Shown in pieces: positions 20,801-40,658 of a stretch of 64,000 nt of DNA; position 1 is the stretch's first letter, and each line of letters starts with the position of its first letter. Under the pieces are notes generated by a model. That model was not told the origin of the DNA and ran no database searches. It saw nothing but the letters and a program-made list of their open reading frames with translations. The stretch lies in contig DF237221.1 of assembly GCA_000708835.1 (NCBI GenBank), positions 51,783 through 115,782 of the forward strand, in the 5' to 3' direction. The DNA is from Klebsormidium nitens (lineage: Eukaryota > Plantae > Klebsormidiophyceae). The translations under genes were made by a program, and so were the position numbers.

Positions 20801-23800
20801 CGGGAAAGCGATAGGAGCTGGTGATACAACACATGTTCGGGGTGTCGAGCAATGATCAGCGTATAATCGTTTACGGTAAAGCATCCTCTAGACCTCCAAA
20901 GAAAAGGGGAAACAATAGTGAGATGAGACGGTGCAGATGCAGAAAGTTGATGCCATCAGTTTGCACCACAAAAGATATTCGAACTCGCAATGCTTGCCTT
21001 ACCCGTAGCACGTGATGGAAGAAGTGCTTCGTCTGCAGCTGCTGGAGGAGTGACGTGGCCTGCACATGTGAAATATGCAGTGGACTTACTCCTAAGTCCC
21101 AAGGGACGGACCGCACGATCGCATGTAGTACACTTTTCATTCCGATTCTCGAAGACCGGCTCTTTGATGTGGAGAGTTACAGAAGCAGACAAGATGCTTC
21201 CTAGGAGCCTCCCCCTTCCCTTTAGATGCCTTATGTCTCAATACTCAAGAAGCGGAGCGTGCGTCAGCCAAAGAACGCTGCGACGAGACTTCCCGAACGT
21301 CGACCTTTTTCAAAACAGCACGTTAGAAACGGGTTCTTTAAACACTGAGTCAAACAAGAGCTTGGTCAATACAGTACTCCGCTTGCTGCGACCCTTATCA
21401 CTAGATTCGCTTAGCTTCCAAAGTCTGTAAGAATCTAGGGCTTGCGAGTTCTGGAGGGCTTACCTCGTGCCGGCTGATCTTCTTCTCTTCGACGACGAGG
21501 TCCACCGCTTCCGAGCCCACGAAGCACCGGTCATACTTGCGCAGCTTGTACCACCGGTCCTTGATTGCCAGCTTCTCTCGGAGCCACTTGACTGTCTCCA
21601 GATGCTTGTCAGGGGTTTCGTCGGCTACAGGGGCGGCAGACTTATTGGGGCCGGGGGTTGCGGGGGCGGAGGAGGGAACGGCTGCAGACAAAGACTATTG
21701 TGTTATAGATAACCCGACGAAGCTTAGCAGCAAATTTATTGGTGCTTTTGACAGGATTAGGCCTGGGTTGGACTAAACGGGGCCACTGTGAGCACAGCCA
21801 AAACTTAGGAGGCCCTGCGCATACTCCCATCGCCGATCGACCTTCGCTGCACTGTAGTCACTGAGGAAGATTAACCAGCGGGTTCGGAGAAGTAAACTTG
21901 GTGGCTGCTGCCAGAAGCATAGCAGCGCACCTTTGACCTCTTAGCAGATAATATGCGGCCATTCGCTTCAAGTCAATGCTGCAACCCCAAAGAAGTCAGA
22001 CAGTTGACGACCAACCAAAGATGGATGAAAGATGGAGACGAGCAACGGCGGCCAGGGAGTCCTTACGGGTTTCGTGAACAAGCTTCAGCTCTGCATCCAG
22101 ATTCCCGTCGTTTTCCAGTGCCTGCAAGTGCAAGACATCGGGAGTTTGTTTGCATGATTGGTGGCTTTTGTAATCGCTTGATTTCACCATTTGCAGTCAT
22201 CATTTCGAATCGGAGATCAGAAGTCCTTATTTCCAGCCAACAGGACATGCTTGACGGGACATCCTCGCAATATCATCTCAGTCTGCAAGAATATCAAGCA
22301 AATGATTGACTCGGATCAGGAAAGCTTAGCAATGGGAATGTTACTACGAAACGGACTCGTTTCGACCTCAGAACTAAGAATCCATTGTCATATCCGCAGA
22401 TGCCCTCTGTTGCTTGCTCCTTAAAAATCGGCTTTAGCAGGGGGCTGGTCTGAAGTTTACAAGGAGAGGTAGAGGAAGTGCCTGCGAGACTTGAATCGTA
22501 ATGATGTCTCTACATAGAAGCGATCAAGGACGTCCAAGGGATGGAGAAATTCAAACCAACGACAATTCAAGTGTGGATAATCTGCTTAATCAGCGCACTG
22601 ACCCAAAGTCGAGACCCTCTGACTGTGACTGTAAAACCCAAACCTGCCACAAGTAAGTCGGCATAGACTGAAGATACACCTACTCTACCCAACCCACTTT
22701 GCCTTGAGTACGAAGGACACACGTTACAATCCGGTGTCCAGACAGTGGCTTTTGCCCTGATTATCGCAGAAGCAAAGAAGCGCACCTGCAGGGCATCGTT
22801 CCCCCCAATGAGCTTCTCGTTGAAGAAGATCTGGGGGCAGCTGCTTTTCCCGGTTCGCTCCTGCATCTCCTCCCGCCTCTCTGGGAACACGTCCAGGTTG
22901 ATCTCTGCAAACTTGACGCCCTTCTTCTTCAGCAGCGCCTTGGCGGCCTTGCAGTGGGGGCACCCACTGATGGAAAACACTGTGACCCGCCCCTCCCCAT
23001 ACTCATAGCTCGGCGCAGGCTCCACAGCCAGTTCTGAAGAGGCCTCTGGTTTGGAACTCTCTGCATCATCCCTGAGATCGTCCGCAGCAACTGGCTTCTT
23101 GTCCTCCGGTTTCCAAGCCGCCTTCACATAGTTTGCTTGCTGCTTCATCTTCTCAGTAAGAGACCCCACCCTCTGGATAACCCGCTCCTTCACCGTCGTC
23201 TTTTCTGCGCCGGGGCTTGCCAGATCTGAAGGAGGCCCCGCCGGATTGGCCTCTTGAAGCTCCGCTGCACTTACTTTGACCGGTTCGCCTTCAGGTGGGA
23301 CAGCCTCAGAGCTTGCATCGGCCCCCACTTTGGTCTCAGACTTCCATGACGATCTTAGTGAAGAGGCCTGAGACTTGACCTTATCACCAATCGAACCGAC
23401 ACTCTGGTAGACCCTGCTTTTCAATGTTGGTGTCCCCGGCTTCGTCCCCTCCTTTCCCATCGTCTCCTCCTCTGTGCCCTTCCCTCCATCCTTCTCGGAC
23501 TTTGGTTCAGACTTGAATGCAAGTGCAACTCTGTCTTTCAGACCAAACATGGTCCCCTTCTTGCCTGCTTTTGACACTGGTTCCCCATCTCCTGTAACTT
23601 CGATCGGCGCAGATTCACTTGCTGCTGGAGGAGTAGCTGCCACCTCTGCTGGTGGCATATCACTGTGAAATGCTGCTAAGACCCTCTCTTTCTCCCTGGC
23701 TGCATCGTTTGCGTCATCATCCTTCTCAGCGCTTGCGACCTGCTTTGCCACAACAGGCAGGCCACCGACAGACTGGACTCCTGTAGCCAGGCCAACCTGC

Positions 23801-24033
23801 TTTGTCTCTCCCTTTGGCGCAGTTTCAGATGCTGATTTGGGTACCGCTTCTGGCGCTGTTGAGTGAAATGCCGCCAGGACCCTCTCCTTTTCCTTCGCCG
23901 CATCAACGTCCTCCTCATCTAACGTCACTGCTACGGGCAATTGTTCCTTCATCAGCACAGGAACGCCCCCCACAGATTGTACCCCTGTCGCAAGTCCATC
24001 TTCAACGGTGGGAACTTTACTATCTTCTGCCAT
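17827..24033 (-). CDS. Glutaredoxin-DEP-DUF547 protein with a long low-complexity N-terminal extension, ~9 exons
   Basis: Grx: VTVFSISGCPHCKAAK...SSCPQIFFN...IGGNDAL. DEP: IKDRWYKLRKYDRCFVGSEAVD...HFFHHV. DUF547: EEKLAFFINIYNALVIH, YSLTAIENGILRGN, PEPLIHFALVCGAKSCPP, LSKILSWYKTDFG, YQPYDWSAN. Confidence 0.9.
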
Positions 24034-25256: not shown

Positions 25257-28200
25257 ATGGTTGAGTTCCAGATCTTCATTGACCTGGAGAGTGAGGAAGA
25301 CGTAGGCGCTAGTGAGTGGAAGTGCTTTCAGAAATGTTTGTCCTCTGGTTCTTTCCACTTTTGCACTCTAGCCGCTTCGATGCTATTTGATGGCATGCTT
25401 GCTAAGTAGAAGCTAGTAAAGCCAGGTGTCTGAAAGAAAGGGCACGGGGACTGGGTGTGTCAGTCTTCCGTTGACTCCACTTCAAGACTCTGTTACACCC
25501 TTCTGCATTCTAGAATTCTATCCTGATAACTTTGCGACACCGGTCCTAGAAACAATCGCTTGAGAAGTTTGCAAGCGCACATGCTTGTACAGGAGCCATG
25601 CTTAGCACCAGTACCTTGAATGTGTCAAAATTAGTCAACACTTGAAGTGAGACGCAAAATGATGTTGAGAAGACCCGGTTATCAGCGCTGCGCTGGCTGG
25701 ATAGAGCACTTGTATGGTCCTCATCATAACACCAGATTCACTGACAAACCAGCCTGATCATTTGCCAAGTTGCACTAGGCTCAGTGGGTTGGTTCAGCAG
25801 ACCTTTTTCTCTGAGCTGTTCCGCTAATAACAACCTCAAGGATTATTAGGCAACTAACTACTTTGCTGCAAGCAGTCTCTGCAATCTGCAATTGCACTAG
25901 ACGACCTCTTTTTGTATTGAAAGCGTTCTTGACGGTCCCCTACAAAGGACTTTAGTCCAAGGGAACCGTGTGGTCTTGATTAGTGTTGCTTTATATCGAT
26001 AAATACGACGGCATCGTCTCTCCTGCAGAAACAGCAGGTGCTCCTCTCCAACCTTCCGGAAAAACGACTGCCAAGCAGGAGGATGAGGATGATCTGGTCG
26101 AGCTTGATCCCGCCCACTTCAGCAGGAAGGCAAGACCATTTTCATTTTGCTCTCGCTTCTGTTTAATCTACGCGTGTGTCCTGTCAGATCTGCACCTCTC
26201 TTGATGACCGTTTGCCAACAATATCCAGGTGGGGACGTTTTCTATTACCTCGCTATGCTTACATTCGACTCTCTTGTTCAACGAGCAGAGCCCGGAGCCA
26301 CAGAGAAGGGAAGTGTGAATCAACCTTAAACAACGCCCATTGTAATAAGTCAATCAACAGCTCCCCTTGCTCGTGAAAAGCAGGGGGTCATTGCGTCATC
26401 CTGCACAACAGAAACACATGGGTTGGTCGGTCTCCTGAAAAGGTCTCAATCTCTGCCATGCAGCAAAGACGCCATTCTGGCTCAACGATCATCCTCCTGG
26501 AAGATTCTGAAAGTTGCACGACTACCGGAACCGGGACTGGGAACGGAACCTGGAACGGATACGGAAAGGCTTTTGGTGCGGCTGCTCGGACGTCCTCTTT
26601 GGAGGATGACGTGGTGATGCTGGATGAGGCACAGGTCGAGGATCGACACCTGCGGGCAAGTGCTTCATCCAGGAAGACCACTGTCAATCCAGGACCGCGA
26701 GAATTGAATATTCTGCACGAAGGCAAATCGCAGTCCAGTAAGGGTTTCACAGGCTGTCAGTTGTCTGTCCAGCAGACTCACAAAGACCAGTAGGGCATGG
26801 CATAACATCTTGTTATCGACTCGGCAGAAGATCTTCGAAGAAGGCGACCACAGGCACAGACATCAAGGTTCTGGGTGGAATCCTTTCATTTGAAATGTAG
26901 TCACCAGATTCTTTGTGCCAGGAATTTTATGCCGTCTTAGGTTTGTCAGTGGGTCACCTTGCTAATGGGTTCTGCAGCTTCTGAGAACGTCTACCGCGTT
27001 CCCCTTTTAAGTCCCAAGCAGACATTCGATTCATGGACGTAGGCGCTATACTGAGATACTCTGCGGTCACTGAATTTACGTGCCTACCTCCTTGTGCATA
27101 AAAGGTAGATTTGTGCGTCTATGCAGAAGCAGCGCGCAAAGACAGTTGAGCACAACAAGCGCGCACTGATCACTGTGACCAACACAGTCGCGAGCATCGA
27201 GGCCCGCATGAAGGAGGCCCTAGATCAGGCCGCAAAAGTCTCGCAGAGTTCCGTGGCTGAGGGCAGCGCTCCGCTGATAGGAGCGGAAGGAACGGAAAAG
27301 TTGCAGAAAAAGAAGGCTGGGAAGCAGACGGAACGGAGAGGCAAAAGAAAGGCAACGGAAGGTGAAGAGGAACGGCTGCTTGACGGGGAGGGCCACCTGA
27401 CTATTAACCCCGAGCAAAAAGGGACAGCTAGAACTAGGGCGGCGAGTAGCCAAGCAGCACGCGCCGCGTCCGACCAGGCCCCGGTTGAAAAGCCGGTAGC
27501 CCAGAGTTTGGCTCCAAGGAAAGGACAGGCGGCCGCGGGGGCGGGGGCGGCGGGGCGTGGGGGCCGCGTTCCCAAGCCCAAGAAAAAGGCCGCAGCAGGT
27601 CGGAGGGTGAAAGGTGCGCAAGCTTGTAACGTTCTGTCTGAATCAACGGCTGTGAGAACGATTACTGGACCAGTACGGTGTGTTCTCCTGGCGTAAGGAT
27701 GCACATAGCTTTGCTTCTGATATACGTCCCGGTCGCTTTTATAAGACACCGTGTCTGTACCTGAAACATGAAGTTTCTGATGCTTTCTTTCGCATCTCAG
27801 CGGACCGGACTGCAGTCGTACGCCAACGCGTACGAGCATCCAGATCAGTCCGAAAGAGGACTTCAAACGTCAATCTCTTCCGAAACCTGATTGAGTATCC
27901 TTTCCCTCAGGCCTTGCAAAAGATCGTTGTTTTGTATTCTGCTTTACATTTTAGAAGGGTCCCAATATCAGCACTGCCCATACGGTACCTGCAGCGGTGC
28001 TCCCCCGCATCCCAGCCGGTCCGAACTGGATCAACGCGTACGGACGTCCGGAGCCTTCCGAGGAGGCCATTCTGGACGCGACCAAGCAGCTGTTTGCGGC
28101 TCTGGGCGGCCGGTTGGCGTTTCTGCCCAAGGGCGACGCCGAACACAATACAATCATGGCCTCACACTTAGCAGCTACCGGGGTGAGGCGTCACTGAGGG

Positions 28201-30258
28201 TTTTGAGTATCAAGTTTTTGGGGTTTAGCATTCTATCGGTTGATATCTGATGTGAATGAGGCAGTCAGTGCTCAAGTTTTTGAAGCCTTTGATTAAAACA
28301 GCTTCCCACTGGATGGGGGCGGTCCCTAGATTTCTGCACGGTTCGTCCGACCTGTCTTCCTGACCTGCTTCCACTCTTAGCTCATTGCCAAAGTTTGGCT
28401 CGATGCGCACCATTTGGACCTTTCCGTTGAACTGACTGCCTTTCTAAAAGCAGAAATGCTGCGCGTTTTGACACCATCAAACAGTGCAAAAAGCAGGCGC
28501 CGTAGACGTTCTCGCGGTCTGCATTTCGAAGCAAGCTCTCTGTGTGTCAAGGTCCCCATCGTGGCCATCCACAAAGTGGTACACGGGCCGGCTCGCCTGG
28601 CCGCTTTCGAAGAGGAGGCGCGCGCGCTTGAGCTGGTGCGCAAGGGGGGCGCAAACGTGCAGGTAATAAAATCCTCCATCCTGTTTCAGTGGCGTTGGAC
28701 ATACAGCTGCTTGCATCAAACTTGAGATTGAGTTCCGATTCCTCCGAGCCTCCGAGCATGGTTCCTGATCTTGAGCCGTTGATGCGTTCCTGGCCAATCG
28801 GACGGTTCAAGATAAAAAACATGCTCGAAGCACTTGTAGCCCGATGACACAAAGAGCTGTAGTAAGCTTGCCAGCCTCAGACGGGTGCAGTTTTCTTGGG
28901 GTTTAGGTGGGTTCGAGCGCGCAGCGAGTGAATTTGAGGTTCGGATTTTAGGATTGGGCTACCAGCTTACTACGTATCACTAGTGCTTGTTTCTTCAGAA
29001 TCGGAGAGATGCCGTGCAGGTTTGCTGGCACGGCACCAGCGAGGAAGCCCTGCTGTCAATTCTCAAGACGGGCTTTACCGCGAGCCGGACCGTGAACGGC
29101 AAGTCGGCAGGAAACGGGCTCTACATGGCGCCGACGCATGCACCAACCACCAGCATGTGAGCACGCCTAACGTGCCCATTTCTGTATCTATGTTAGCCCC
29201 CCACCCTTCCTCCGTCCCTTATCTTTCTATTTAAAAGCAGTCTCGTCGCTTTTCCTTTCCGCTTCGTTACTTCCTACCCCCCTCCCTGATCTATTTGAAG
29301 GCTTTCGAGGTCCAAGATCTGAATTCCTTGAGGTTTTAAAGCTTTGCGACTTGAAGAGTTTTGCCCTTATCCAGGAGAATTGATTTTCTGTCAATGAGGA
29401 GAAGCTTCTGACGGTCGCGCTGCGTGCCCTCGCATGGGGCTGGTTCAAGTATCTCTCTTTTGAAAGAGGGCCTTAATCTGGCGGAGAAGGTCCGTATGAG
29501 TGTTTGAATTGGTAGGAGCGTGCGTTTGAGCGGCTAGATAAACTTGTTTCATTTGGTTGGCTGCTCGCAAACATGTTTGAACGCGAGTTTGTTGAGGCGA
29601 GACATTCTCATGACCCGCACTTTTGCCCTTGGTTTGGCCTGCGTCTGAAACGTATCATGGATTTCGAAAAACAACACTAGAAGAGCCGCGGGGGATTCCG
29701 AAAGGGCTCATTCTCATCAGTAGCCATAGTAGTTACGAGTTTGCTGCCCCAGATTCTGATCACCAGACGACATTTTTGGCAGAATTTCTCCAGCACACCG
29801 ACATTTTACTTGCGCTCTCCACCGTTTCACTCAAATTTCTACTTAAAGTCAGCAAGTACGGTCAATTACCCTGACCTGTGCTCACACACATAAAAAACTC
29901 AATTCTGAGATGTTCCGCACCCTGAATCCCTAGATCTGTCGTACCCGTCTCCCGGGCAGTGAAACAACTCAGCTTAGCAGAACCCATTCTCAAACCGGTA
30001 CGTACCTCCGTCAGAGGTTACACTGGCGGTGGTGACGGCCACGTGGGCCACATGTTCCTCCTGCGGGTGATCCTGGGTGGCGTCGAGGTGGGGTACGCGG
30101 GGATGGACCTCCCAAGCGATCCGGATTTGTACGACTCTGCTGTGGACCATTTGGAGGACCCAAGCGAGAGAGTCGTTTGGACGCCCTATCTGTACTCCAG
30201 GATCCTTATCGAGTACGTGATCAGCTTCAAAGTGGATCACGGTGGTGTGTGGTTCTAG
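25257..30258 (+). CDS. PARP-fold ADP-ribosyltransferase-like protein (RCD1/SRO-like catalytic domain), paralog A; well-supported exons 27127-27613, 27995-28182, 28552-28662, 29020-29156, 30015-30258; N-terminal exons approximate
   Basis: Phase-consistent splicing gives ARLAAFEEEARALELVRKGGANVQ|VCWHGTSEEALLSILKTGF...GNGLYMAP...TSIGY...HMFLLRVILG...YDSAVDHLEDPSERVVW...ILIEYVISFK. Confidence 0.8.
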
Positions 30259-31188
30259 AACGACGATATCCACATGAGAATATCTGGGTATTCAGAGCTT
30301 CTACAAATCATGTAAGCGGCTTGCAGCTGGCATGCCAGGGGGTAACTCGTTGGCTTTCCGACGTGTAAGAGATACGTGTTTCGGTAAAAGGCACTATGAT
30401 CGCCAGGCTGCTGATGGTAGCAACACGTGTGCATTCAAATTTCGGGTTATGTACTACCTGTCGAACACGGACATGACACTTGACACGGATGTAATCCAAG
30501 TATTATCATATCGCCATGGAAGTTACTCAATTGCAAGTTGTGCAGACGTCGGGCCCCTTGCGAATTTACATTCTATTTCTAGTCTAATAAAGGCTGCCCT
30601 ATTAAGGTCTTAGCGCCACTATCATTGCAATCGTGAGCATGCCTGGGAGACTCGTGCAATGTCTATGCAGCTTGCTTTGACTACTGGCACCTGATTGTAA
30701 TCTTTCCAAACCGATATTGTAAAACTGTGATACGGATGTGAAAAGACTGAAGCACATGCGGTTTTGACTATATCGGAACTATGGGTGATGCATGAGATTG
30801 GTCCATTTGTGAAGATGGAAACATTCGGCTGATTCTAACTTCATTGGGGCATGCCTCGGACTTGTTGGCATGCTTGAGTTGGGAAACGGATCTGGCATTT
30901 GTAATTGGGGTAGGATCTTGCACGACGAGGCATTAGGCAACGGGGAACTTGACTCGACGACGGCAGGAACACATCAAATCTACATGTATTCAAATATGCA
31001 TCTGCTTGCCATTTTAAGTTGATACTCTAATTCCAAAAGGAGTGAAACGCGTGAGAATAACATCACGCTCCTCAAATGAGATGTGCTCACGATTTTGTAC
31101 TACTAGATTGGTCGAACTTCATTTCACATTTTGACTCAAAAGTCAAGCTGCTCAAAGGTGTTGTTCATGCCACCCGTCGCTCTCCCTT

Positions 31189-34100
31189 TCAAATCCCAAC
31201 CCTGGGTCGAAAGCTGATCACATACTCGATCAGAATTCTGGAGTACAGGTATGGGGTCCACACAATGATCTCGCTTGGGCTTTGAACATAGTTTGCTGCG
31301 GAGTCGTACAGGTCCGGGTTGCTGGGGAGGTCCGTCCCCGCTTGCCCCTGCTCAACGCCGCCCAAAATAACCCGCAGAAGAAACATGTGGCTCACGCCCG
31401 ATGCGCCGGCTCGGGCGTAGCCCCTGACAAGAAAAGTCACGTGTTCGGTCGGACGCAAGAAACTGACAAGAATTTGAAACTGACGACTCGATGTGAAGGC
31501 AAAACGATCATGGTGAACCGGCTTCGATCTTTGCGTCTTCTAAGAAAGAACGATGGTGGATGGGGCAACCAAGTGACTTCATCCACTTCGCGCTAAAATG
31601 GACTCAAGCGGACAACATGCAATTCTAATGGCTTCCCATATAGTAAAGCATGTCATGTTGTAACGCAAGCACAATCTCTGCTTACATGCTCGTGCCAGCC
31701 TGATTCCCGGGAGCCATGTACAATCCGTTCCCGTGCGACTTCCCGTGCACGGTTCTGCTCGCCGTGAATCCCGTCTTGAGGATCGATAGCAGGGCGTCTT
31801 CGGATGTCCCGTGCCAGCATTGCTGCACGTTTGCACCGCTCGGGCGCACCTGCGAGAATAGAAGAGGGCGTCAGATTTCAAGATCATCTAAGTTGAGAGG
31901 GCAAGTAATCTCGGACGGACTACTGTGTGTCGGCGTAGAGCGCCGTAATCCAACTTGGAGTTTAACCGCTTCAAACCGCAACCGAGCACGAACGCACTAT
32001 TTGAAGCACCCGTCTGAGGCTGGCGACACCTAACGCTCCTGAGGCTTATTTCTTTAAGCATGAGTGACCAACAGCTGGTCACGTCAAACCTGGAGCGGTT
32101 GCCGCTCCGTTCTCTCTTAGCAATCCGGCACTCAGCTTCTCGAAAACAAGTCAGACACCCTTGAAGACCCTCAAGAAACCGCTTAGCATGCGCGAGACAC
32201 AGGGTTTGAAGCACATCATAATTCGCTCAACAAGGTTCAAACATGACCTTGTACTCGACAGCAACTACAGTAATCAGACCAAGTCCTTAAGGCAAACGTA
32301 GAGGTGATACCAAATCCTGACGGAGCTTTAAGGCCCATTCCGCGAAATGTCCGCCGTAACCCACGTACAGCTAACGCACCGAGCCGACCTCACCAAAGTC
32401 AGTCCCGCCTTCCCGGTAAACCCAGGGGGCAGTGACGGCTTCATTCGTCAAGTTGTCCAGATATCGTCTAGCCCCACCGCCAGACATGGGTGATCAATTC
32501 GAAAAGCTTTCTGAACGGACTGACGACGTGGCAGTCAAAGGTAGAAGGGTTACAGATTCCAACCTGCGCGAGCGTGCGCGCCTCCTCCTCAAAGGCGGCC
32601 AGGCGCGCGGGGCCGTTGAGCACCTTGTGGATGGCCACGATGGGAACCTGTGGACACAACAACTTCGATGCAGAATTGAGTGCCGGTGTTCTACGAGAAG
32701 CGCTTCAAGAAAAGTCCCTCATAAGTTTGCAGTCTGACAGCGCACCACAATCTTTGCCAATTTCTGACAGCGAAGCCGTAAACGTTGATGCCTCGTGAGT
32801 ACGCGATGAAGTAATGAGCCTGCGGAATGATAACCTGCGCCGATTTGTTAGGACGTTACCACCCAAAACAACGAACGTTCAGGTGTCCATTTAGGTAGAA
32901 ACAAAGGTCTTTGGTCTACGTTACGATTGATGGGTAATCCATTGTTTCTAGACGATTGTCCTCCGAAGCACAACGCTCAGAACTTCGACCCTTCTGAGCT
33001 CTCCAAACCCAGGCAGACTCCTTACCCCGGTGTTCGCCAGCAAGGCCATGACTTTCTTGTGGTCGGAGTCGCTCTTGGGCAGAAAGGCCACCCGCTTGTC
33101 AAGCGCGCCAAACATTTTCTTGGTCGCTGCGAGGACCGCTTTCTCAGAGGGGCCGGTGCGAACCGGCTGGTGGGGTATGGGGACCGGGATCGCGGCGGCT
33201 GCAAGTGGCACACGGAGGCTGTGATGACTGGAAAAAAGTCGCACAAGCAAGCTTTAAGACACAAATAGAGGCGATCTGAGAACTGTCACTGAACTGCGAG
33301 GAATTCTGGACTAAGATTTGAGTAGACATTGGCGGTTATTTCTTAAAACGTTTCGGTAACCAACTGCCTAGTTTGCGGGCAAGCTAGTCGCTCCCGATTC
33401 GTCAGCTCCACGGCTTGAGAGATTTGAATGGACGGGTGCGTCGCTACGGAAGAAGTCTCAAAGTCAGCGAAACGTCACAAAGTCTTACACTTCGGCATCA
33501 TAGTAATCGGGACGCTAGGAACAGCCGCTGGAGTACTTCGGGGCTCCTTCACGACTTTGTGAAAAATCAAAGATAAGACCAAAGAGATCAACAGCTTCGA
33601 CTGCACATGGCGCACACACACAACGCGGTCCCGAACACGCGCGAGCGCGCACCTTTCCTTGCCGGGGCCTTGGCCCCTGCCGCGGCCGCCCTCCCTTTCG
33701 CCCGCGGCGGAGCGGCTGGCGGCGTTAGCCCCATTCCCTGCGCGATCCCGGCCGCGATTGCCGCCTGAATGGAAGCCCGGAGCGCGGTTAGCCCGGAAAC
33801 CGACTTCGAGGGATCCCTCTGCTTCGTTGTTCTCTTCTTTCTCTTCGGAGCGGCCTTCCCCTCATCGGCTCGAACCTTCTGGGCAGCCGGCTGTTTGGTT
33901 CCAGCAATTGTTTTTTCCCCGCGCATACCCGGCTCTTCCGCGCGTGCACCCGCTTCGTCTCCCCGGGCGGCAGGAGGGCCCGCGCGCGCGCGCGCCTTGG
34001 CTCGCGTGGTCCGCTTTTCCGCCGGGTGCGCATCGGGCTCCGCTTCCGAGTTTCCTTCGTCACCCGGCAGCCAGTCGTCATCATCCGTCGCCTTCCGCTT

Positions 34101-35942
34101 CCGCTTCTTCCGTTTCTCGTTTCCAGTCCCCCGGCCGCTCTTCACGGTTGCCGCTGCTCCAGTGTTCCGCTGCTCCGTTGGTCCGTTGTTGTTCCGTTCT
34201 GCAGCCGGCGCCGGCGGGGAGCCCACTGTACCGGACGCGAGCGTCTGCGCGTCACGAACTCTCTCCTTCACAGCCTTTTGTTTCCGACTTTTAGTAATGG
34301 GCTCCGCTGCTTCCGCTGCCGGAATGAGCGGAGTGCGGGCCGTTCCGGCGGAATAGTCCGCGCTCCGGCCCCTGTGGGAGTGAAGCGATTTGGCAGTGTC
34401 TTGGGCTCTCTTCATTCGGGCCTCGATGCTCGCAAAGGTGTTGGTGACGGTAGCCAAAGCGTGCTTGTTTTGCTCGATGGTCACCGCGTTCAGCTTCTGC
34501 ATTGCAAAGCAAGGATAAGATAATAATCCTGCCAGGTAGACACTTTCACACTTGTTGGAGTACAGCTTGAAAGATGCAATACAAGTGATTGCACATCAGG
34601 ATTGGCGTTTCAAGACCCGCAACTGGGAGCGCCCGCAGACGAGGCTGCCTTTGTTACTGCAAACTTGCCAAAGATAACAGATTCGAGTATTTGAGCAACT
34701 GTTTTGCGCGATCAGAGAGAAAGGTCCCAACAGGGGCTGGTTGACAGATCTGAGCAACACGGCGAGAGGGCTTCTTACAAGTCAACACCTTGCACAAGGC
34801 AACACCTCAAAAGATCCTTTCATCAAAAGTAACCAAAATTGCTCATTGCAGTCGCGTATGAAAACCCTTGGAGACCCACCAAGGCCCTTGAAGCGGCGCG
34901 CTTTTCCTTGAATATGGTCCCGCTCGTTTATTCAAGTTCGAGATTGACGCATGAGACTACGGTGAGTGCACAATGGTACAGAAAAGAAGAGAAAAGCAGA
35001 CGCAGTTTAGGTCACGTGTCCTGGCTGAATCCAATCAAAGCGCCTTGTAAGAAAGTAAAGGGTCCAAAGCTGAGCACTCTCACCTGTTGTTGCTGCTCCA
35101 TATACTGCTCGTAATCCAGCACCAATACTTCCTCGTCTTGCTCAGAGGCAACATTGAATTCAGCCTGTTGTGCCCCGTCATCCGATGCTTCGTGGGCACT
35201 GCTGGCTGCTTCGGGCAAGAAACATCCATCAGTAAGTTCTGCACGACCCAAAAGGATCAAGTAACATTTTGGCTTCAGAAGGTCTTCGATCGCTGAATGC
35301 AGCGAGTGGCGCTTTCCTAGGTGTCATTGCAGCGGCTTGCCATCCAGGCGCTTACAGTCACGCGGCAGTCAGAGTGTCTCTCTTTGACGTTAAAAAGCGT
35401 ACACCTAACTGCCCAAGCATCATTCGTGGTGCCTTCGTGACATCTTCCGGTTTTGGTGACAATGGGCATATAGTTCAGAGATTTTAAAGAGGATCTGGAG
35501 GATCCTGCACCCTCCATCCGCACGACGTTGAGCAGTCTCTGCTTCCTGTCCTTTGGAGGACGTCTGCTGGAATAGAATGTCCATGGCGCAAGCCTGTCCC
35601 AAGCTGGTTCTGGGAGTCCACTGAGTTCAAAAGCGCTGATATCAGCATAAGGCAGGCTACCCGAGGTGATTAAGGCTTTCCTTCTATGCTCTCTCAGCCG
35701 GTGATTATGTGCTTGGATCTGGACACATTCCCCAGTAAACAGGCCGTGTAGGTATCTGCTGCACCTTCTCTGAGAACCAGCAAGAAATTGACAACGCAAG
35801 ACCTTGAGTGTCTGGAGTCTGTATCCACTTTGAAAAGCTGGCTGACGCTGAAACATAATCCGTCGTCACATGCCTTACCTTCAGCTTCCTCGTCGCTGTC
35901 CAGATCAATGAAGACCGACTGCATCGCTGTCTGGGGCCCCAT
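31189..35942 (-). CDS. PARP-fold ADP-ribosyltransferase-like protein (RCD1/SRO-like), paralog B; exons 34495-33651, 33198-33026, 32647-32564, 31849-31686, 31423-31189; N-terminal exons approximate
   Basis: Exon-by-exon homologous to paralog A: GANVQQCWHGTSEDALLSILKTGF...GNGLYMAP...TSMGY...HMFLLRVILG...YDSAANYVQSPSEIIVW...ILIEYVISFR. Confidence 0.8.
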
Positions 35943-37568: not shown

Positions 37569-40500
37569 TTAGGGAAGGAGCAGGACGTCATCTGCGTGAG
37601 AAGGACGACAATCTTAGCAGCGGATGAGTCGAGAGCTTTTGGCATCAAGCATGAGTTTCTATCACGAATCCAACGACAAATCTCATCTAATTTATGATCA
37701 AATCAGTAGCCGCAACAATCCAGAACACGCTAGTAAGACAATCGTGAGAGAGCTTCGTCTATCTACCCAACTCTCGGTAACTGCAAAATAAGCAGTCCAT
37801 GAAAGATTTATCAGTTTTATGAAGCGGCCAGCAAGACGTCAAGCTGCCCTTCATGCTGCGAATAGAAGTACGTCCTGCATTTCGAGGGGACCACTGCACC
37901 CCATTATAACGCAGGGTATAAACCGCTTCCTTTCAGACGCTTACAGGAAGAGCACTGCATTCCGACGGGCAGACAATAATCTTCGCTCAGGAAACATTGC
38001 GCTACTTTACTAGCAAGGGCCGGGGCTTACCTGCAAAGATGAAGTCCGGGTCCTTGATACCGTTCATCTTGGATAGCACGTCAATGCTGGTGGAGAACTC
38101 CCGGGCGATCTTGGAAAGAGTGTCGCCCTGTAGCACAAAATACTTGTGATTCGTTCGGTCTTCCGCAAATATGTTTGCGTTTTGTAGGCTGAACGAGCAG
38201 TTGGAAAAGATGCCAGAAAGTCGCCCAACGCCGGTTTCGAACTTCAGAGTCAAACTTTGAGAAGCTGTGGTTGCCGCAAAAGATTCACGGCATAGCAAAG
38301 CATTGGACACGTCAGGAGTTGCACTTTTGAAAGCAGTGGAACGCCGAGTATGCGAAAAGATCGGGGCTATCATATCGCCGCTTCGAAAGAAAAGCTAGAA
38401 AATACGCCAATGAGGTTAAGCAAACGCAACGAGTTCGAGAGATCCGGTATGGCCGCAGACGACCTCAACAGAAGCCACAAAACGTTTCTACCAGAACGCG
38501 TTGATAGGGGGCACAGGCGAACAGTACGCAAACTTTAAAAGAAACGTGAAGAGCGAATTGCTTACCGGCCTGATCGTGTACGTCTTCGGAACCCAAAGTT
38601 GTTGACCGGCGTAGACCCTGTCGTCCTTCAACCGGTTTGCCTGCGGGAAGTAGATAGCTTTCAATGTGTTGCTCGCTGCTTTTTGCAAGAAAGCAGAAAC
38701 AGTGCATACCAATATTGAAGACGAGTGTGGTGCACCTTCGTTGACACCTGCGTGGAATTTACGTCGCAAAGTCCAAATCAACGTAAAGATGCCAAGGTCG
38801 GCATTGATGCAAGCTTTCTTGCAAGGTGAAGCCATGGAAACCTGAGGGCTCAGCGAGCAGGAGACACCTTTCAAGAAGAAAGACCAGAAACTTGATCTGA
38901 GAGAGAAGAAGCTCTTTAGAAATGACACTGTTTACTCGGAAGCTTCCGCCACCGCACCAAAACGAAACAATTTCGTGTTCTCAACTTGAGCTCTATCCCA
39001 ACCACCAGAATGACTTAGGTATCAAGAATGAGGCAGGAGCAGACTTGCGCTCACCTCCATAATGACTGAGATTGGCGCTCCCAGGCGGTCTGCGATCTTG
39101 GTGAGTGTGTCTCCATGCTGCACAGTGTACCCACGGCTGCCGCCTTCACCGAGGCCCCCGGCCGCTGCCGAAGGGGGAGCACCTAAAGAGACGAAACGGG
39201 AGGACAGAGTGAGGTCTTACAGTGGAAAGTGACGCCAATGTGCAAAGAGTTGCAGTTTCTCTGTGGGTATGTAACATACAGGTTGCACCAGTTGGCTTGC
39301 TCGTTGCATCGTTATCGACTGCTCGGTGAATTTTTTCTCAGCAGGTGTCTTCTGCTTTCTGTAATGGAAAGAGCTCTTCCAATCTCATGTATGACATTTG
39401 AGAAATGCAGATTCCGTTAGGGATCCGAAGCAATCAAACAATCATGATTCAAGCAGGCTCGCAGGCAACAATCAAGGGAAAACTTAGTCAAGGCAGGACC
39501 TTTGATTATTCTGTGATCTCGAAGACGTCTCCTTTTGCTTTGGGCTCACGTTCAGACTGGTGTATGATTGTATGAGTATAAGATCGATCGCCGCTCCTTA
39601 CCTGCAGCAATTGCCTCGTCAATCACGTGGTGCGAGCTCTCCTCGCCGTGCTTGCGAACGGCCCACGCTGCCGCACCGATCGCTGCAGTGGCTGCCCCAG
39701 CGCCAGCGGCAAACCGCAGAAAGCGGTGAGGTCCCCTGCAAAAGCCACAGTTCTTTCTCAGGTTGTGCAAACCTACCATATCAAGAAGTAGACAAGTATC
39801 AATGCTGGCAAAGATAGCCCAAGACTGCGTCTGATGACAAGTCAATCCACGTGAAGCTCAACCAACCAGATTATTTAAGAGGCAGATGACCGTCTACCTA
39901 AGGATCGCGGAAAATAAAATGCTTAAGAATTCTTACAAAAGGCTTCAGACTTGTAGAAATATCTGCGCATTCCAAGATGTACTACATGAATCTAGAGTAT
40001 GGGACATGGAAGTTGATACGAGCTTTCAGAGGTTGCACTGCTTGCGAAATGGTTTCATTTTGGGGAACTAGAGCTGCTCTGATTGTGCCTCAAGATATTC
40101 AAAAATGCCAATGTCACAGGACAACCGGAAGTGAAAGATTGTGAAAAGTGGTCGAGGTTGGACCCAACACACGAGGCAGCTATAAGTTGCTCCCAACACT
40201 GTTGTTGACGCTCTTCTCAAGAAAGGGCTTTCGAAAGGTTTTTCTGCCCAATGCTGCAACACTGATCAATCAAGAAATTGAATTAGCTAGATGAGCTAGC
40301 CCCTACTTCCTAAGGACCCTGGCTTCTAACACAATAAGCTCCCTCTACCCAATACAAACTGAGTGTCAACTCCTATCCAAAAGCCATTGATGAGATCAAA
40401 ACTCAAGTCCATCAGAACAAACATGGGGGCAACTCACTCCCTCTTCTCCTCCTCCCGGGTCGCCATGCACACAACCCCTTGCCTAACGGACGGCCTGCTC

Positions 40501-40658
40501 AGAGTCCTGAGAGCCCTTTGCGGGAGTTGGGTAATCAGGAATCGATTGGATGGGGGAAGCTGTCGGACGGGAGACGTCCTAGTGGAGGAAGTCGCGGTTT
40601 GTACCTGGAAGAACGAAGCTGCATGCAGAGGGGCAGAAGACAGCAGTGCTGAAGCCAT
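37569..40658 (-). CDS. Double-LysM protein with a predicted plastid transit peptide and an Ala-rich hydrophobic segment; exons 40658-40438, 39735-39602, 39182-39055, 38640-38566, 38127-38031, 37591-37569; ~225 aa
   Basis: All splice phases are consistent. LysM1 is YTVQHGDTLTKIADRLG...ANRLKDDRVYAGQQLWVP and LysM2 is YTIRPGDTLSKIAREF...NGIKDPDFIFADDVLLLP. The N-terminus MASALLSS...VVCMA is S/T/R-rich and lacks acidic residues. Confidence 0.85.

What the first reader, a model, noticed from the sequence alone, without database searches (positions are those of the whole stretch)
27995..33198. RCD1/SRO-like PARP domains with an intact H-Y-E catalytic triad and no RST domain
Seen: both paralogs have His in WHGT (A: 29029), Tyr in GLYMA (A: 29122) and Glu in PSE(R/I)(V/I)VW (A: 30166). 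Each stops a few codons after EYVISF. Known (recalled, needs alignment): plant RCD1/SRO proteins show the diagnostic context ARL..F....RG.ANVRYAW, HM.LCRVI.G and VD....P..Y.VW...MN..I.PE.V.SF. They have lost the H-Y-E triad (RCD1 is L-H-N), are considered catalytically inactive, carry a C-terminal RST domain and were described as a land-plant family. Here ARLAAF...GGANVQ.CW, HMFLLRVILG and VDHLEDPSERVVW...ILIEYVISF match that context, with Glu at the RCD1 Asn position. Inference: these may be catalytically active, RST-less relatives of the SRO family, i.e. an undescribed algal ADP-ribosylation system that preserves the ancestral state.
Basis: partly seen in the sequence, partly recalled or inferred. 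Interest (0 to 1): 0.85.

Follow-up and report, generated by a model that had tools for sequence, protein, structure and literature searches.

The report
Algal SRO-like PARP genes, intact triad
The alga Klebsormidium nitens has two neighbouring, expressed genes for small PARP-type enzymes that are the closest known algal relatives of the plant RCD1/SRO proteins yet keep the full catalytic His-Tyr-Glu set and lack the RST tail; a 2022 supplementary table already lists exactly this, and no one has tested their activity.

Summary
Two convergent, intron-containing paralogs (KFL_002720120 on +, KFL_002720130 on -; Klebsormidium nitens scaffold DF237221.1) encode a C-terminal PARP catalytic domain. 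HMMER alignments place His-Gly, Tyr and Glu on the triad positions of PARP12, PARP15 and RCD1. Spliced RNA contigs confirm the exon structure. Both transcripts end 6-9 codons after EYVISF, with no downstream RST exon. No RST or WWE domain is detectable.

The nearest relatives by sequence, profile and predicted structure are land-plant SROs. On a tree the Klebsormidium clade lies just outside the land-plant SRO crown. The triad and the gene pair are conserved in two other Klebsormidium-like genomes under purifying selection (dN/dS 0.12-0.25).

The claim "undescribed" fails. Vogt et al. 2022 (Plant Cell, Suppl. Data Set S1) already list these two proteins (A0A1Y1IDH6, A0A1Y1I9P2) as PARP-only homologs of the SRO PARP domain with His/Gly/Tyr/Glu all conserved, and the third paralog (A0A1Y1IDR0) with Met. 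They do not discuss them.

Catalytic activity and "ancestral state" remain untested.

New here:
- RNA-backed gene models.
- The position as sister to the SROs.
- Conservation across species.
- Conserved N-terminal SUMO-interaction-like motifs.

Interest is moderate.

The parts
27121..27613 (+). Gene A (KFL_002720120), long exon. It holds a conserved N-terminal helix (QKQRAKTVEHNKRALITVTNTVASIEARM) followed by a basic, disordered, NLS-like region. 27121 is the annotated ATG, but the exon probably begins at an acceptor just after it.
   Evidence: The ORF and its similarity to gene B are. An RNA contig covers 27450-27611 and carries 841 nt more upstream. P0093 maps here.
27995..28182 (+). Gene A exon encoding the N-terminal alpha/beta part of the PARP-like domain.
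   Evidence: GT..AG joints at 27613|27995 and 28182|28552 appear in four runs.
28552..28662 (+). Gene A exon (VPIVAIHKVVHGPARLAAFEEEARALELVRKGGANVQ).
   Evidence: The joint 28662|29020 is seen in runs X1 and X2. Low-depth contigs that retain this intron also exist.
29020..29156 (+). Gene A exon carrying His-Gly (29029-29034), Tyr (29122-29124) and the T-S-x-G-Y motif.
   Evidence: This exon alone scores 26.9 bits on Pfam PF00644, above the 26.7 cut-off. Codons were checked. The joint 29156|30015 is.
30015..30258 (+). Gene A last exon, with HMFLLRVILGG, Glu (30166-30168), EYVISF and the stop at 30256-30258. The 3'UTR runs to about 30522.
   Evidence: Contigs run unspliced from 30015 to 30522. 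HMMER aligns the Glu with RCD1 Asn428 and PARP12 Ile660.
31189..31423 (-). Gene B (KFL_002720130) last exon, with Glu at 31272-31270 and the stop at 31191-31189. The 3'UTR runs down to about 30967.
   Evidence: Contigs run from 30967 to 31422 and show the joint 31423|31686. The exon set reproduces P0092 exactly.
31686..31849 (-). Gene B exon with His-Gly (31813-31808), Tyr (31720-31718) and T-S-M-G-Y.
   Evidence: Pfam PF00644 scores 29.7 bits. Joints are and codons.
32564..32647 (-). Gene B exon (VPIVAIHKVLNGPARLAAFEEEARTLAQ).
   Evidence: Joints 31849|32564 and 32647|33026.
33026..33198 (-). Gene B exon encoding the N-terminal alpha/beta part of the PARP-like domain.
   Evidence: A joint, plus a loose end that continues into the exon ending at 33653. 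Confirmed.
33653..34496 (-). Gene B long exon: the conserved helix, then a long basic disordered region with KRKKRKRK-type NLS-like runs.
   Evidence: Pfam finds no domain here.
35084..35205 (-). Gene B exon 2, with an acidic SIM-like motif (EEVLVLDYE).
   Evidence: The annotated model is reproduced. The motif is also present in the L002 relative.
35879..35942 (-). Gene B exon 1, with the start codon and the SIM-like motif VFIDLDSDEE.
25257..25301 (+). Inferred, unannotated first exon of gene A (MVEFQIFIDLESEED, followed by GT).
   Evidence: It is homologous to exon 1 of gene B and of the L002 gene. Splicing here was not verified.
26079..26108 (+). Inferred coding stretch of gene A with the motif EDEDDLVELD. 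Exon limits were not determined.
   Evidence: It resembles EEDDELVELD in L002.
26560..26634 (+). Inferred gene A exon end (AAARTSSLEEDDVVMLDEAQ, followed by GT at 26635).
   Evidence: The protein sequence and the GT donor position are conserved upstream of the L001 ortholog of gene A.

Best explanation
The locus holds two convergently transcribed paralogs of a small Klebsormidium-specific gene family. The family has three members in K. nitens.

Each protein has, in order:
- short acidic motifs that look like SUMO-interaction motifs;
- a conserved helix;
- a long basic disordered region with NLS-like runs;
- a C-terminal minimal PARP-type ADP-ribosyltransferase domain. It lacks the PARP1-style regulatory helical domain and has no WWE and no RST.

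The catalytic domain is the nearest algal relative of the land-plant RCD1/SRO PARP-like domain and branches just outside the SRO crown. Unlike most SROs it keeps every residue known to be needed for NAD+ binding and catalysis:
- the His-Gly pair;
- the triad Tyr;
- a Ser-x-x-Tyr pair;
- the Glu.

The most likely reading is that these are active, probably nuclear, NAD+-dependent ADP-ribosyltransferases. Mono- or short-chain modification is more likely than long polymers. They would represent the enzyme-type relative of a lineage that in land plants acquired an RST domain and mostly decayed into non-catalytic transcription co-regulators.

Shown: gene structure, expression, domain content, triad positions, conservation, and nearest relatives. 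Inferred: enzymatic activity, nuclear location, SUMO binding, and the direction of evolution.
For: - Domain identity: Pfam PF00644 is the only domain hit above its cut-off. The AF2 model of P0092:335-561 has pLDDT 89.7 and pTM 0.84. It matches PARP12/14/10/15 and RCD1 catalytic domains with TM 0.73-0.84 by target.
- Triad mapping: His aligns with the PARP15 His and RCD1 L333. Tyr aligns with the PARP15 Tyr and RCD1 H365. Glu aligns with the PARP12 Ile, the PARP15 Leu and RCD1 N428.
- Model geometry: His sits at the end of a strand, Tyr in mid-strand and Glu just before a strand, as described for the canonical triad (PMC2848248).
- Gly after His: it is present here. It is invariant in active PARPs and replaced by Pro in RCD1 and Ta-sro1 (PMC9614482).
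- Expression and ends: spliced contigs from two studies support the models, and there is no joint after the last exon.
- No RST: the RST HMM finds nothing in the six-frame window (best E 2.4) against 60 positive controls.
- Nearest relatives by single-exon search: phmmer of the last exon against 1.8 billion representatives gave 91 hits, of which 50 carry RST.
- Nearest relatives by profile: the Klebsormidium profile against PDB scores Ta-SRO1 66 bits, RCD1 60, PARP14 47, PARP15 and PARP12 44, PARP10 30 and PARP3 25. A land-plant SRO HMM scores the Klebsormidium proteins 100-136 bits against 40-68 for PARP7/11/12/13-type proteins.
- Nearest relatives by structure: the top five Atlas structural matches are Streptophyta SRO clusters.
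- Tree: land-plant SROs have support 98/91 and the Klebsormidium clade 100/98. The clade joins 0.50 from the SRO crown and 1.48 from the outgroup.
- Conservation: the convergent pair in L001 and a single gene in L002 keep H, Y, E and the early stop. dN/dS is 0.12-0.25.
- Independent listing: Vogt et al. Suppl. Data Set S1.
Against: - No biochemical data exist for these proteins.
- The closest characterised relatives, RCD1 and Ta-sro1, do not bind NAD+.
- The third paralog has Met at the Glu position, so Glu is not essential to the whole family.
- The loop after the triad Tyr is SRO-like (A-P-x-N-x-A-x-T). The equivalent of PARP1 Ser904 could be assigned only by the S-x-x-Y pattern, not by superposition.
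- The donor-loop part of the model has lower confidence: 10-residue block means of pLDDT are 74-84 over model residues 121-140.
- H-Y-E does not by itself give polymerase activity. This rests on established knowledge of PARP3 and PARP4.
- The tree had only PARP7/11/12/13-type outgroups. Clades 1, 4, 5 and 6, PARP14/15, and the K. nitens and Chara ANK-PARP proteins could not be included.
Confidence: 0.6

Rival explanations
1. They are pseudo-enzymes like most SROs. The PARP-like fold would serve as a scaffold or interaction module in a nuclear regulator, and the H-Y-E residues are retained without catalysis.
For: The nearest characterised relatives, RCD1 and Ta-sro1, are inactive and do not bind NAD+. 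The loop after the Tyr is SRO-like. Paralog C replaced Glu with Met.
Against: His, Gly, Tyr, S-x-x-Y and Glu are kept in two paralog lineages and three taxa at dS 0.5-1.5 with dN/dS 0.12-0.25. The features that block NAD+ binding in RCD1 and Ta-sro1 (Leu for His, Pro for Gly) are absent. Met at the third position is compatible with mono-ART activity, as in H-Y-[I/L/V] PARPs.
Confidence: 0.2
2. They are ordinary clade-3-type mono-ART PARPs, akin to PARP7/10/11/12/14/15. The resemblance to SROs would be shared primitive similarity, so they say nothing about SRO origins.
For: Foldseek against PDB does not separate RCD1 from PARP12/14/10/15. Single-sequence phmmer bit scores differ modestly: SRO1 56, RCD1 46, PARP15 42. 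Language-model features match generic PARP clusters. Outgroup sampling in the tree was narrow.
Against: In a 1.8-billion-protein library the last exon retrieves almost only SROs (50 of 91 hits carry RST), and only two hits were recognised as non-SRO mono-ART-type PARPs. Profile scores favour SRO by 14-20 bits against PDB and by about 60-70 bits in the cross-HMM test. Atlas structural matches rank SRO clusters first. An independent JACKHMMER search from Ta-sro1 recovered these proteins before canonical PARPs.
Confidence: 0.12
3. The Glu is a secondary regain within Klebsormidiophyceae, not a retained ancestral state. The ancestor of SROs and these genes would already have been H-Y-[non-Glu].
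For: The earliest-branching family member in the tree (paralog C) has Met. H-Y-keeping SROs have Arg, His, Cys or Trp. PARP7/11/12-type outgroups have hydrophobic residues.
Against: Three of four Klebsormidium lineages have Glu. Citarelli et al. infer H-Y-E as the PARP ancestral state, with independent losses in clades 2 and 3 (PMC2964712). Met to Glu needs two nucleotide changes.
Confidence: 0.4

Closest known systems
Land-plant RCD1/SRO family (PARP clade 2; structures 5NGO RCD1, 7PLQ Ta-sro1)
   Same: This family has the most similar PARP-like domain by sequence, profile and predicted structure. Shared motifs are ARL..F, ANV..(A/C)W, A-P-x-N-x-A-x-T, HM.L.RVI.G..E, (F/Y)DS..D...P...(I/V)VW and EYV(I/V)SF. 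Both are minimal domains without the PARP1 helical regulatory domain. Both are streptophyte lineage.
   Different: The algal proteins have no RST domain and no WWE. They keep intact His-Gly/Tyr/Glu where RCD1 has Leu-Pro/His/Asn. They come from an alga, not a land plant. They branch outside the land-plant SRO crown (98/91). They carry a different N-terminal region with SIM-like motifs and a basic disordered region.
Human mono-ADP-ribosyltransferases PARP12, PARP14, PARP15 and PARP10 (clade 3)
   Same: They share the same minimal catalytic fold (TM 0.73-0.84), conserved H-G and Y in identical positions, and a short acceptor loop.
   Different: The third triad residue is Ile, Leu or Val in those enzymes and Glu here. 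They carry WWE, macro or CCCH domains. Sequence and profile scores are lower than to SROs.
H-G-Y-keeping SROs and SRO2 (Physcomitrella, Amborella, Sphagnum, Adiantum SROs; Arabidopsis SRO2, reported to be a mono-ART)
   Same: They show that the SRO-type domain can keep the NAD+-binding residues and, for SRO2, activity.
   Different: All of them have a residue other than Glu at the third position (Arg, His, Cys or Trp), and most have RST.
PARP1/2/3 (clade 1)
   Same: They have an H-Y-E triad.
   Different: They carry the helical regulatory domain, WGR and other domains, and a long acceptor loop. Similarity is only weak (PARP3 25 bits, PARP1/2 below threshold).

Membership tests
PARP superfamily (PF00644, diphtheria-toxin-like ART fold) | Match to the PARP catalytic domain model above the curated cut-off | tested here: met
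   PF00644 scores 40.9, 35.9 and 43.9 bits for P0092, P0093 and P0094 against a cut-off of 26.7. The His/Tyr exon alone passes the cut-off.
PARP superfamily (PF00644, diphtheria-toxin-like ART fold) | ART fold with His, Tyr and Glu at the canonical strand positions | tested here: met
   The AF2 model has pLDDT 89.7. Foldseek finds PARP catalytic domains at E about 1e-14. Residue mapping comes from HMMER alignments and DSSP positions. No atom-level superposition on PARP1 was possible.
PARP superfamily (PF00644, diphtheria-toxin-like ART fold) | NAD+-dependent ADP-ribosyl transfer | not testable with these tools
   This needs biochemistry.
RCD1/SRO family (PARP clade 2) | PARP-like domain most similar to the SRO PARP domain | tested here: met
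   An independent JACKHMMER search from Ta-sro1 also recovered them.
RCD1/SRO family (PARP clade 2) | C-terminal RST domain (PF12174) | tested here: not met
   Pfam gives no hit. An RST HMM finds nothing in the six-frame window, with 60 positive controls. Stop codons fall 6-9 codons after the domain, and the RNA contigs show no further joint.
RCD1/SRO family (PARP clade 2) | N-terminal WWE domain (type A members only) | tested here: not met
   Pfam finds no WWE in the proteins or in upstream ORFs.
RCD1/SRO family (PARP clade 2) | Placement inside the SRO clade on a tree | tested here: not met
   Land-plant SROs form one side of a branch (98/91) that excludes the Klebsormidium clade. The clade is adjacent to the SROs, consistent with a sister group, but the root and other PARP clades were not sampled.
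RCD1/SRO family (PARP clade 2) | Degenerate catalytic triad | tested here: not met
   The triad is H-G-Y-E in A and B and H-G-Y-M in paralog C.
Clade 3 mono-ART PARPs (PARP7/9-15) | H-Y-[Ile/Leu/Val/Thr] triad with WWE, macro or CCCH accessory domains; closest sequence kinship | tested here: not met
   Glu occupies the third position, no accessory domains are found, and profile scores are lower than to SROs.
Clade 1 PARPs (PARP1-3) | Helical regulatory domain and WGR upstream of the catalytic domain | tested here: not met
   Pfam finds only PF00644. PARP3 scores 25 bits, and PARP1/2 are not found at E<=0.01.

The most novel reading that the evidence does not exclude
These genes encode a SUMO-directed, catalytically active ADP-ribosyltransferase. 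Conserved N-terminal SIM-like motifs (FIDL[DE]S[DE][DE][DE] and [DE]n-LVELD/VLVLD) would dock the enzyme on SUMOylated nuclear proteins, and the H-G-Y-E domain would modify them. The family would be the surviving enzymatic form of the lineage that, after gaining RST in land plants, became the non-catalytic RCD1/SRO transcription co-regulators.
Probability: 0.15. Interest if true: 0.7.

Novelty: new member of a known kind. Interest (0 to 1): 0.4.

Why it matters
Both founding papers on the SRO/PARP clade 2 left open whether streptophyte algae have members (PMC2848248, PMC2964712). It is still debated why plants keep a conserved but mostly dead PARP fold in RCD1/SRO regulators (PMC9614482).

An expressed algal sister group with a complete His-Gly/Tyr/Glu site and no RST gives a concrete protein to express and assay. 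That would show whether the lineage was enzymatic before it became a scaffold.

The value is limited. The proteins are already annotated as PARPs. Their conserved triad is already tabulated in the literature. Nothing here shows activity.

Tried and rejected
- Exon-wise searches: the last exon alone gives no Pfam hit, and the His/Tyr exon alone gives no PDB hit. Whole-domain queries were needed.
- Spliced protein of gene A: it has no reference id, so I did not type it into any tool. Its RNA-supported form was analysed only inside scripts and was not folded. Gene B (P0092) was folded instead.
- The search for homologous proteins: its length and word limits gave only 10 relatives for the domain.
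- Foldseek against PDB: it did not discriminate SROs from clade 3 PARPs.
- Superposition on PARP1 H862/Y896/E988: this was not possible because model coordinates are not exposed. Triad mapping rests on HMMER alignments and DSSP positions.
- Tree outgroups: I could obtain only PARP7/11/12/13-type sequences. PARP1-6, 8, 14-16, tankyrases and the K. nitens and Chara ANK-PARP and CCCH-PARP proteins were not available, so the tree cannot exclude a closer unsampled clade.
- Upstream ORFs: searches for RST, WWE or any other domain there were negative.
- Literature: searches for SRO or RCD1 with Klebsormidium, charophytes or Chara found no paper discussing these genes. Only the supplementary table does.
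- Gene A 5' exons: the splicing could not be checked.

Full report
**Where the window comes from.** The region is eukaryotic and has introns. Gene B's product is identical to GAQ86139.1, also known as KFL_002720130 and UniProt A0A1Y1I9P2. Gene A corresponds to GAQ86138.1, also known as KFL_002720120 and A0A1Y1IDH6. Both lie on scaffold DF237221.1 of Klebsormidium nitens NIES-2285, assembly GCA_000708835.1. An earlier scan note had named the species, and I confirmed it here.

- Six-frame translation and a tblastx comparison of the two arms show two convergent paralogs.
In gene A, His is at 29029, Tyr at 29122 and Glu at 30166. The gene B equivalents are at 31813, 31720 and 31272.
- Both frames stop 6-9 codons after EYVISF.

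**RNA evidence for the gene models.** Contigs from public runs of the same organism carry GT..AG (CT..AC on the minus strand) joints.
- These joints define gene A's exons as 27995-28182, 28552-28662, 29020-29156 and 30015-30258.
- They define gene B's exons as 33198-33026, 32647-32564, 31849-31686 and 31423-31189.
- The last exons run unspliced into 3'UTRs that end near 30522 (A) and 30967 (B).
- The two transcripts therefore do not overlap, and neither is spliced to a downstream exon.
- An RST profile built from 59 RST-bearing hits finds nothing in any frame of the 64 kb window (best E 2.4). It recovers 60 positives in the control set.
- Pfam finds only PF00644 in the three K. nitens proteins and nothing in the upstream ORFs.

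**Are His, Tyr and Glu the catalytic triad?** HMMER alignments of the gene B domain to solved structures place them as follows:

| Residue here | PARP12 / PARP15 | RCD1 |
|---|---|---|
| His (WHGT) | His of PARP15 | Leu333 |
| Tyr (GLYMA) | triad Tyr of PARP15 | His365 |
| Glu (PSEIIVW) | third triad position: Ile in PARP12, Leu in PARP15 | Asn428 |

- The RCD1 triad L333/H365/N428 is from Jaspers et al. 2010.
- An AlphaFold2 model of P0092:335-561, built on a 67-sequence alignment, has mean pLDDT 89.7 and pTM 0.84.
- In that model His108 closes a strand, Tyr139 is mid-strand and Glu201 immediately precedes a strand. These are the positions described for the canonical triad.
- The Gly after His is present. 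It is invariant in active PARPs, and its replacement by Pro helps explain why RCD1 and Ta-sro1 cannot bind NAD+.
- A conserved T-S-x-G-Y follows the triad Tyr. It gives an S-x-x-Y pair like PARP1 Ser904/Tyr907. I assign this by pattern only.
- I could not superpose atoms on PARP1.

**What are the nearest relatives?**
- phmmer with gene A's last exon against 1.8 billion cluster representatives gave 91 hits. Three are 65-69% identical fragments, and the rest are 32-48% identical.
- Of the 91, 50 carry RST and 26 carry WWE_5. All the full-length hits I looked up by name are land-plant SROs: Amborella, Sphagnum, Adiantum, Cryptomeria, Welwitschia, Nymphaea, Musa and others.
- Against all PDB sequences, the single gene B domain ranks Ta-SRO1 (2.6e-14) and RCD1 (4.5e-11) ahead of PARP15, PARP14, PARP12, PARP10 and PARP3.
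- A three-sequence Klebsormidium profile widens the gap: 66 and 60 bits for the SROs against 47, 45 and 44 for PARP14, PARP15 and PARP12.
- Cross-profile tests agree. A land-plant SRO HMM scores the Klebsormidium proteins 100-136 bits and PARP7/11/12/13-type proteins 40-68. A Klebsormidium HMM scores SROs at median 86 and the outgroup at median 42.
- The ESM Atlas structural search lists five Streptophyta SRO clusters first.
- Foldseek against PDB does not discriminate between these families.

**Tree.** I ran a careful IQ-TREE analysis (LG+C20+F+G4 by PMSF) on 80 domain sequences. I left out two long rows, P0029 and P0069.
- Land-plant SROs (98/91), the Klebsormidium clade (100/98) and the PARP7/11/12/13 outgroup (100/100) each form one side of a branch.
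- The Klebsormidium clade joins 0.50 substitutions per site from the SRO crown and 1.48 from the outgroup.
- This fits a sister group of the SROs, as expected from the species tree.
- With one outgroup clade it cannot exclude a closer, unsampled PARP lineage. Candidates include the ANK-PARP proteins of K. nitens and Chara listed by Vogt et al..

**Conservation.**
- A Logan contig from another Klebsormidium-like sample (L001) has the same convergent pair.
- A JGI metagenome contig (L002) has a single, more divergent gene.
- All three of these genes keep His, Tyr and Glu and the early stop.
- Nei-Gojobori dN/dS over the domain is 0.13 and 0.20 for the two ortholog pairs (dS about 0.5) and 0.12-0.25 for all pairs.
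- The domain is therefore under purifying selection in both paralogs.
- The third K. nitens paralog, KFL_003400140, has Met at the Glu position, as does the fragment P0003.

**Prior knowledge.**
- Jaspers et al. 2010 and Citarelli et al. 2010 found SROs only in land plants. Both explicitly left streptophyte algae open for lack of data.
- Vogt et al. 2022 ran JACKHMMER from the Ta-sro1 PARP domain over Viridiplantae. In Supplemental Data Set S1 they tabulated 33 PARP domains that keep His/Gly/Tyr.
- In that table A0A1Y1I9P2 and A0A1Y1IDH6 have no deviation in any of His, Gly, Tyr or Glu and "PARP" as the only domain. A0A1Y1IDR0 has Met.
- These accessions are exactly genes B, A and the third paralog.
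- The main text of that paper says the Glu is not conserved in this subset and does not mention the algal proteins.
- The core observation is therefore published as a table row, but it is neither interpreted nor tested.
- The same paper notes that Arabidopsis SRO2 has been reported to be an active mono-ART.

Both genes extend far upstream of the PARP domain.
- Gene B's annotated model (561 aa, reproduced exactly) starts with two short exons. They carry VFIDLDSDEE and EEVLVLDYE.
- A conserved helix follows (QKLNAVTIEQNKHALATVTNTFASIEARM). After it comes about 240 residues of basic, low-complexity sequence with KRKKRKRK-type runs.
- The L002 relative has the same order: VFIDLDSDDE, then ELVELDFEQ, then QKQQAKT....
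- Upstream of gene A's annotated ATG lie MVEFQIFIDLESEED followed by GT (25257-25301), EDEDDLVELD (26079-26108) and EDDVVMLDEAQ followed by GT (ending 26634).
- The last of these is conserved, with its donor, upstream of the L001 ortholog of gene A.
- An RNA contig carries 841 nt upstream of 27450, more than the 329 nt that the annotated start allows.
- I therefore infer that KFL_002720120 is annotated 5'-truncated.
- The motifs have the form of SUMO-interaction motifs: a hydrophobic core plus an acidic/Ser tail. That reading rests on recalled knowledge of SIMs, and SUMO binding is speculation.

**Mechanism and verdict.**
- The best-supported reading is a small family of expressed, probably nuclear, probably active ADP-ribosyltransferases of the minimal (mono-ART-like) PARP architecture, sister to the land-plant SRO domain.
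- Activity, product type and targets are inferred, not shown.
- Whether Glu is ancestral is unresolved. The states seen are Met in paralog C, Arg/His/Cys/Trp in H-Y-keeping SROs and hydrophobic residues in the outgroup. Against that stand Glu in three of four Klebsormidium lineages and an inferred H-Y-E ancestor for PARPs.
- The finding is real and moderately interesting for the origin of RCD1/SRO proteins. It is a new, uncharacterised member of a known enzyme family whose key feature is already tabulated in the literature.

Noticed in passing
window 25257-27120 (+): The annotated gene A (KFL_002720120, start 27121) is probably 5'-truncated. Conserved acidic SIM-like coding stretches with GT donors lie upstream at 25257-25301, 26079-26108 and up to 26634. 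The last is conserved in the L001 ortholog, and an RNA contig extends 841 nt upstream of 27450.
   Followed up: partly
window 28999-29019 (+): The annotated gene A protein (P0093) contains 7 extra residues (NRRDAVQ) from an acceptor at about 28999. RNA contigs in two runs instead use the acceptor at 29020. Low-depth contigs that retain the whole intron (28635-29042) also exist.
   Followed up: yes
window 28662/29020 versus 32564/31849; L002:5310-5552: The intron between the ARLAAF exon and the WHGT exon sits 9 codons apart in paralogs A and B. In A it follows GANVQ, and in B it follows LAQ. It is absent in the L002 relative, where the two exons are fused. This points to intron sliding, or to independent gain or loss.
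   Followed up: partly
elsewhere in the genome (P0094, KFL_003400140): A third family member has H-G-Y-Met, no RST, and a Pro/Ala-rich N-terminal region. The fragment P0003 from another sample shares the Met.
   Followed up: partly
window about 21189-24033 (-), about 37569-40658 (-) and from about 41858 upward (+): According to the public annotation the neighbours are a glutaredoxin-DEP-DUF547 protein, a small LysM-domain protein and a TPR/zf-MYND protein. There is no evident functional link to the PARP pair.
   Followed up: no
L001:595-7082: The tail-to-tail arrangement of the two paralogs is conserved in another Klebsormidium-like genome (Logan SRR23617307). The duplication therefore predates that species split. 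On the tree, gene A is the faster-evolving derivative of a B-like gene.
   Followed up: yes
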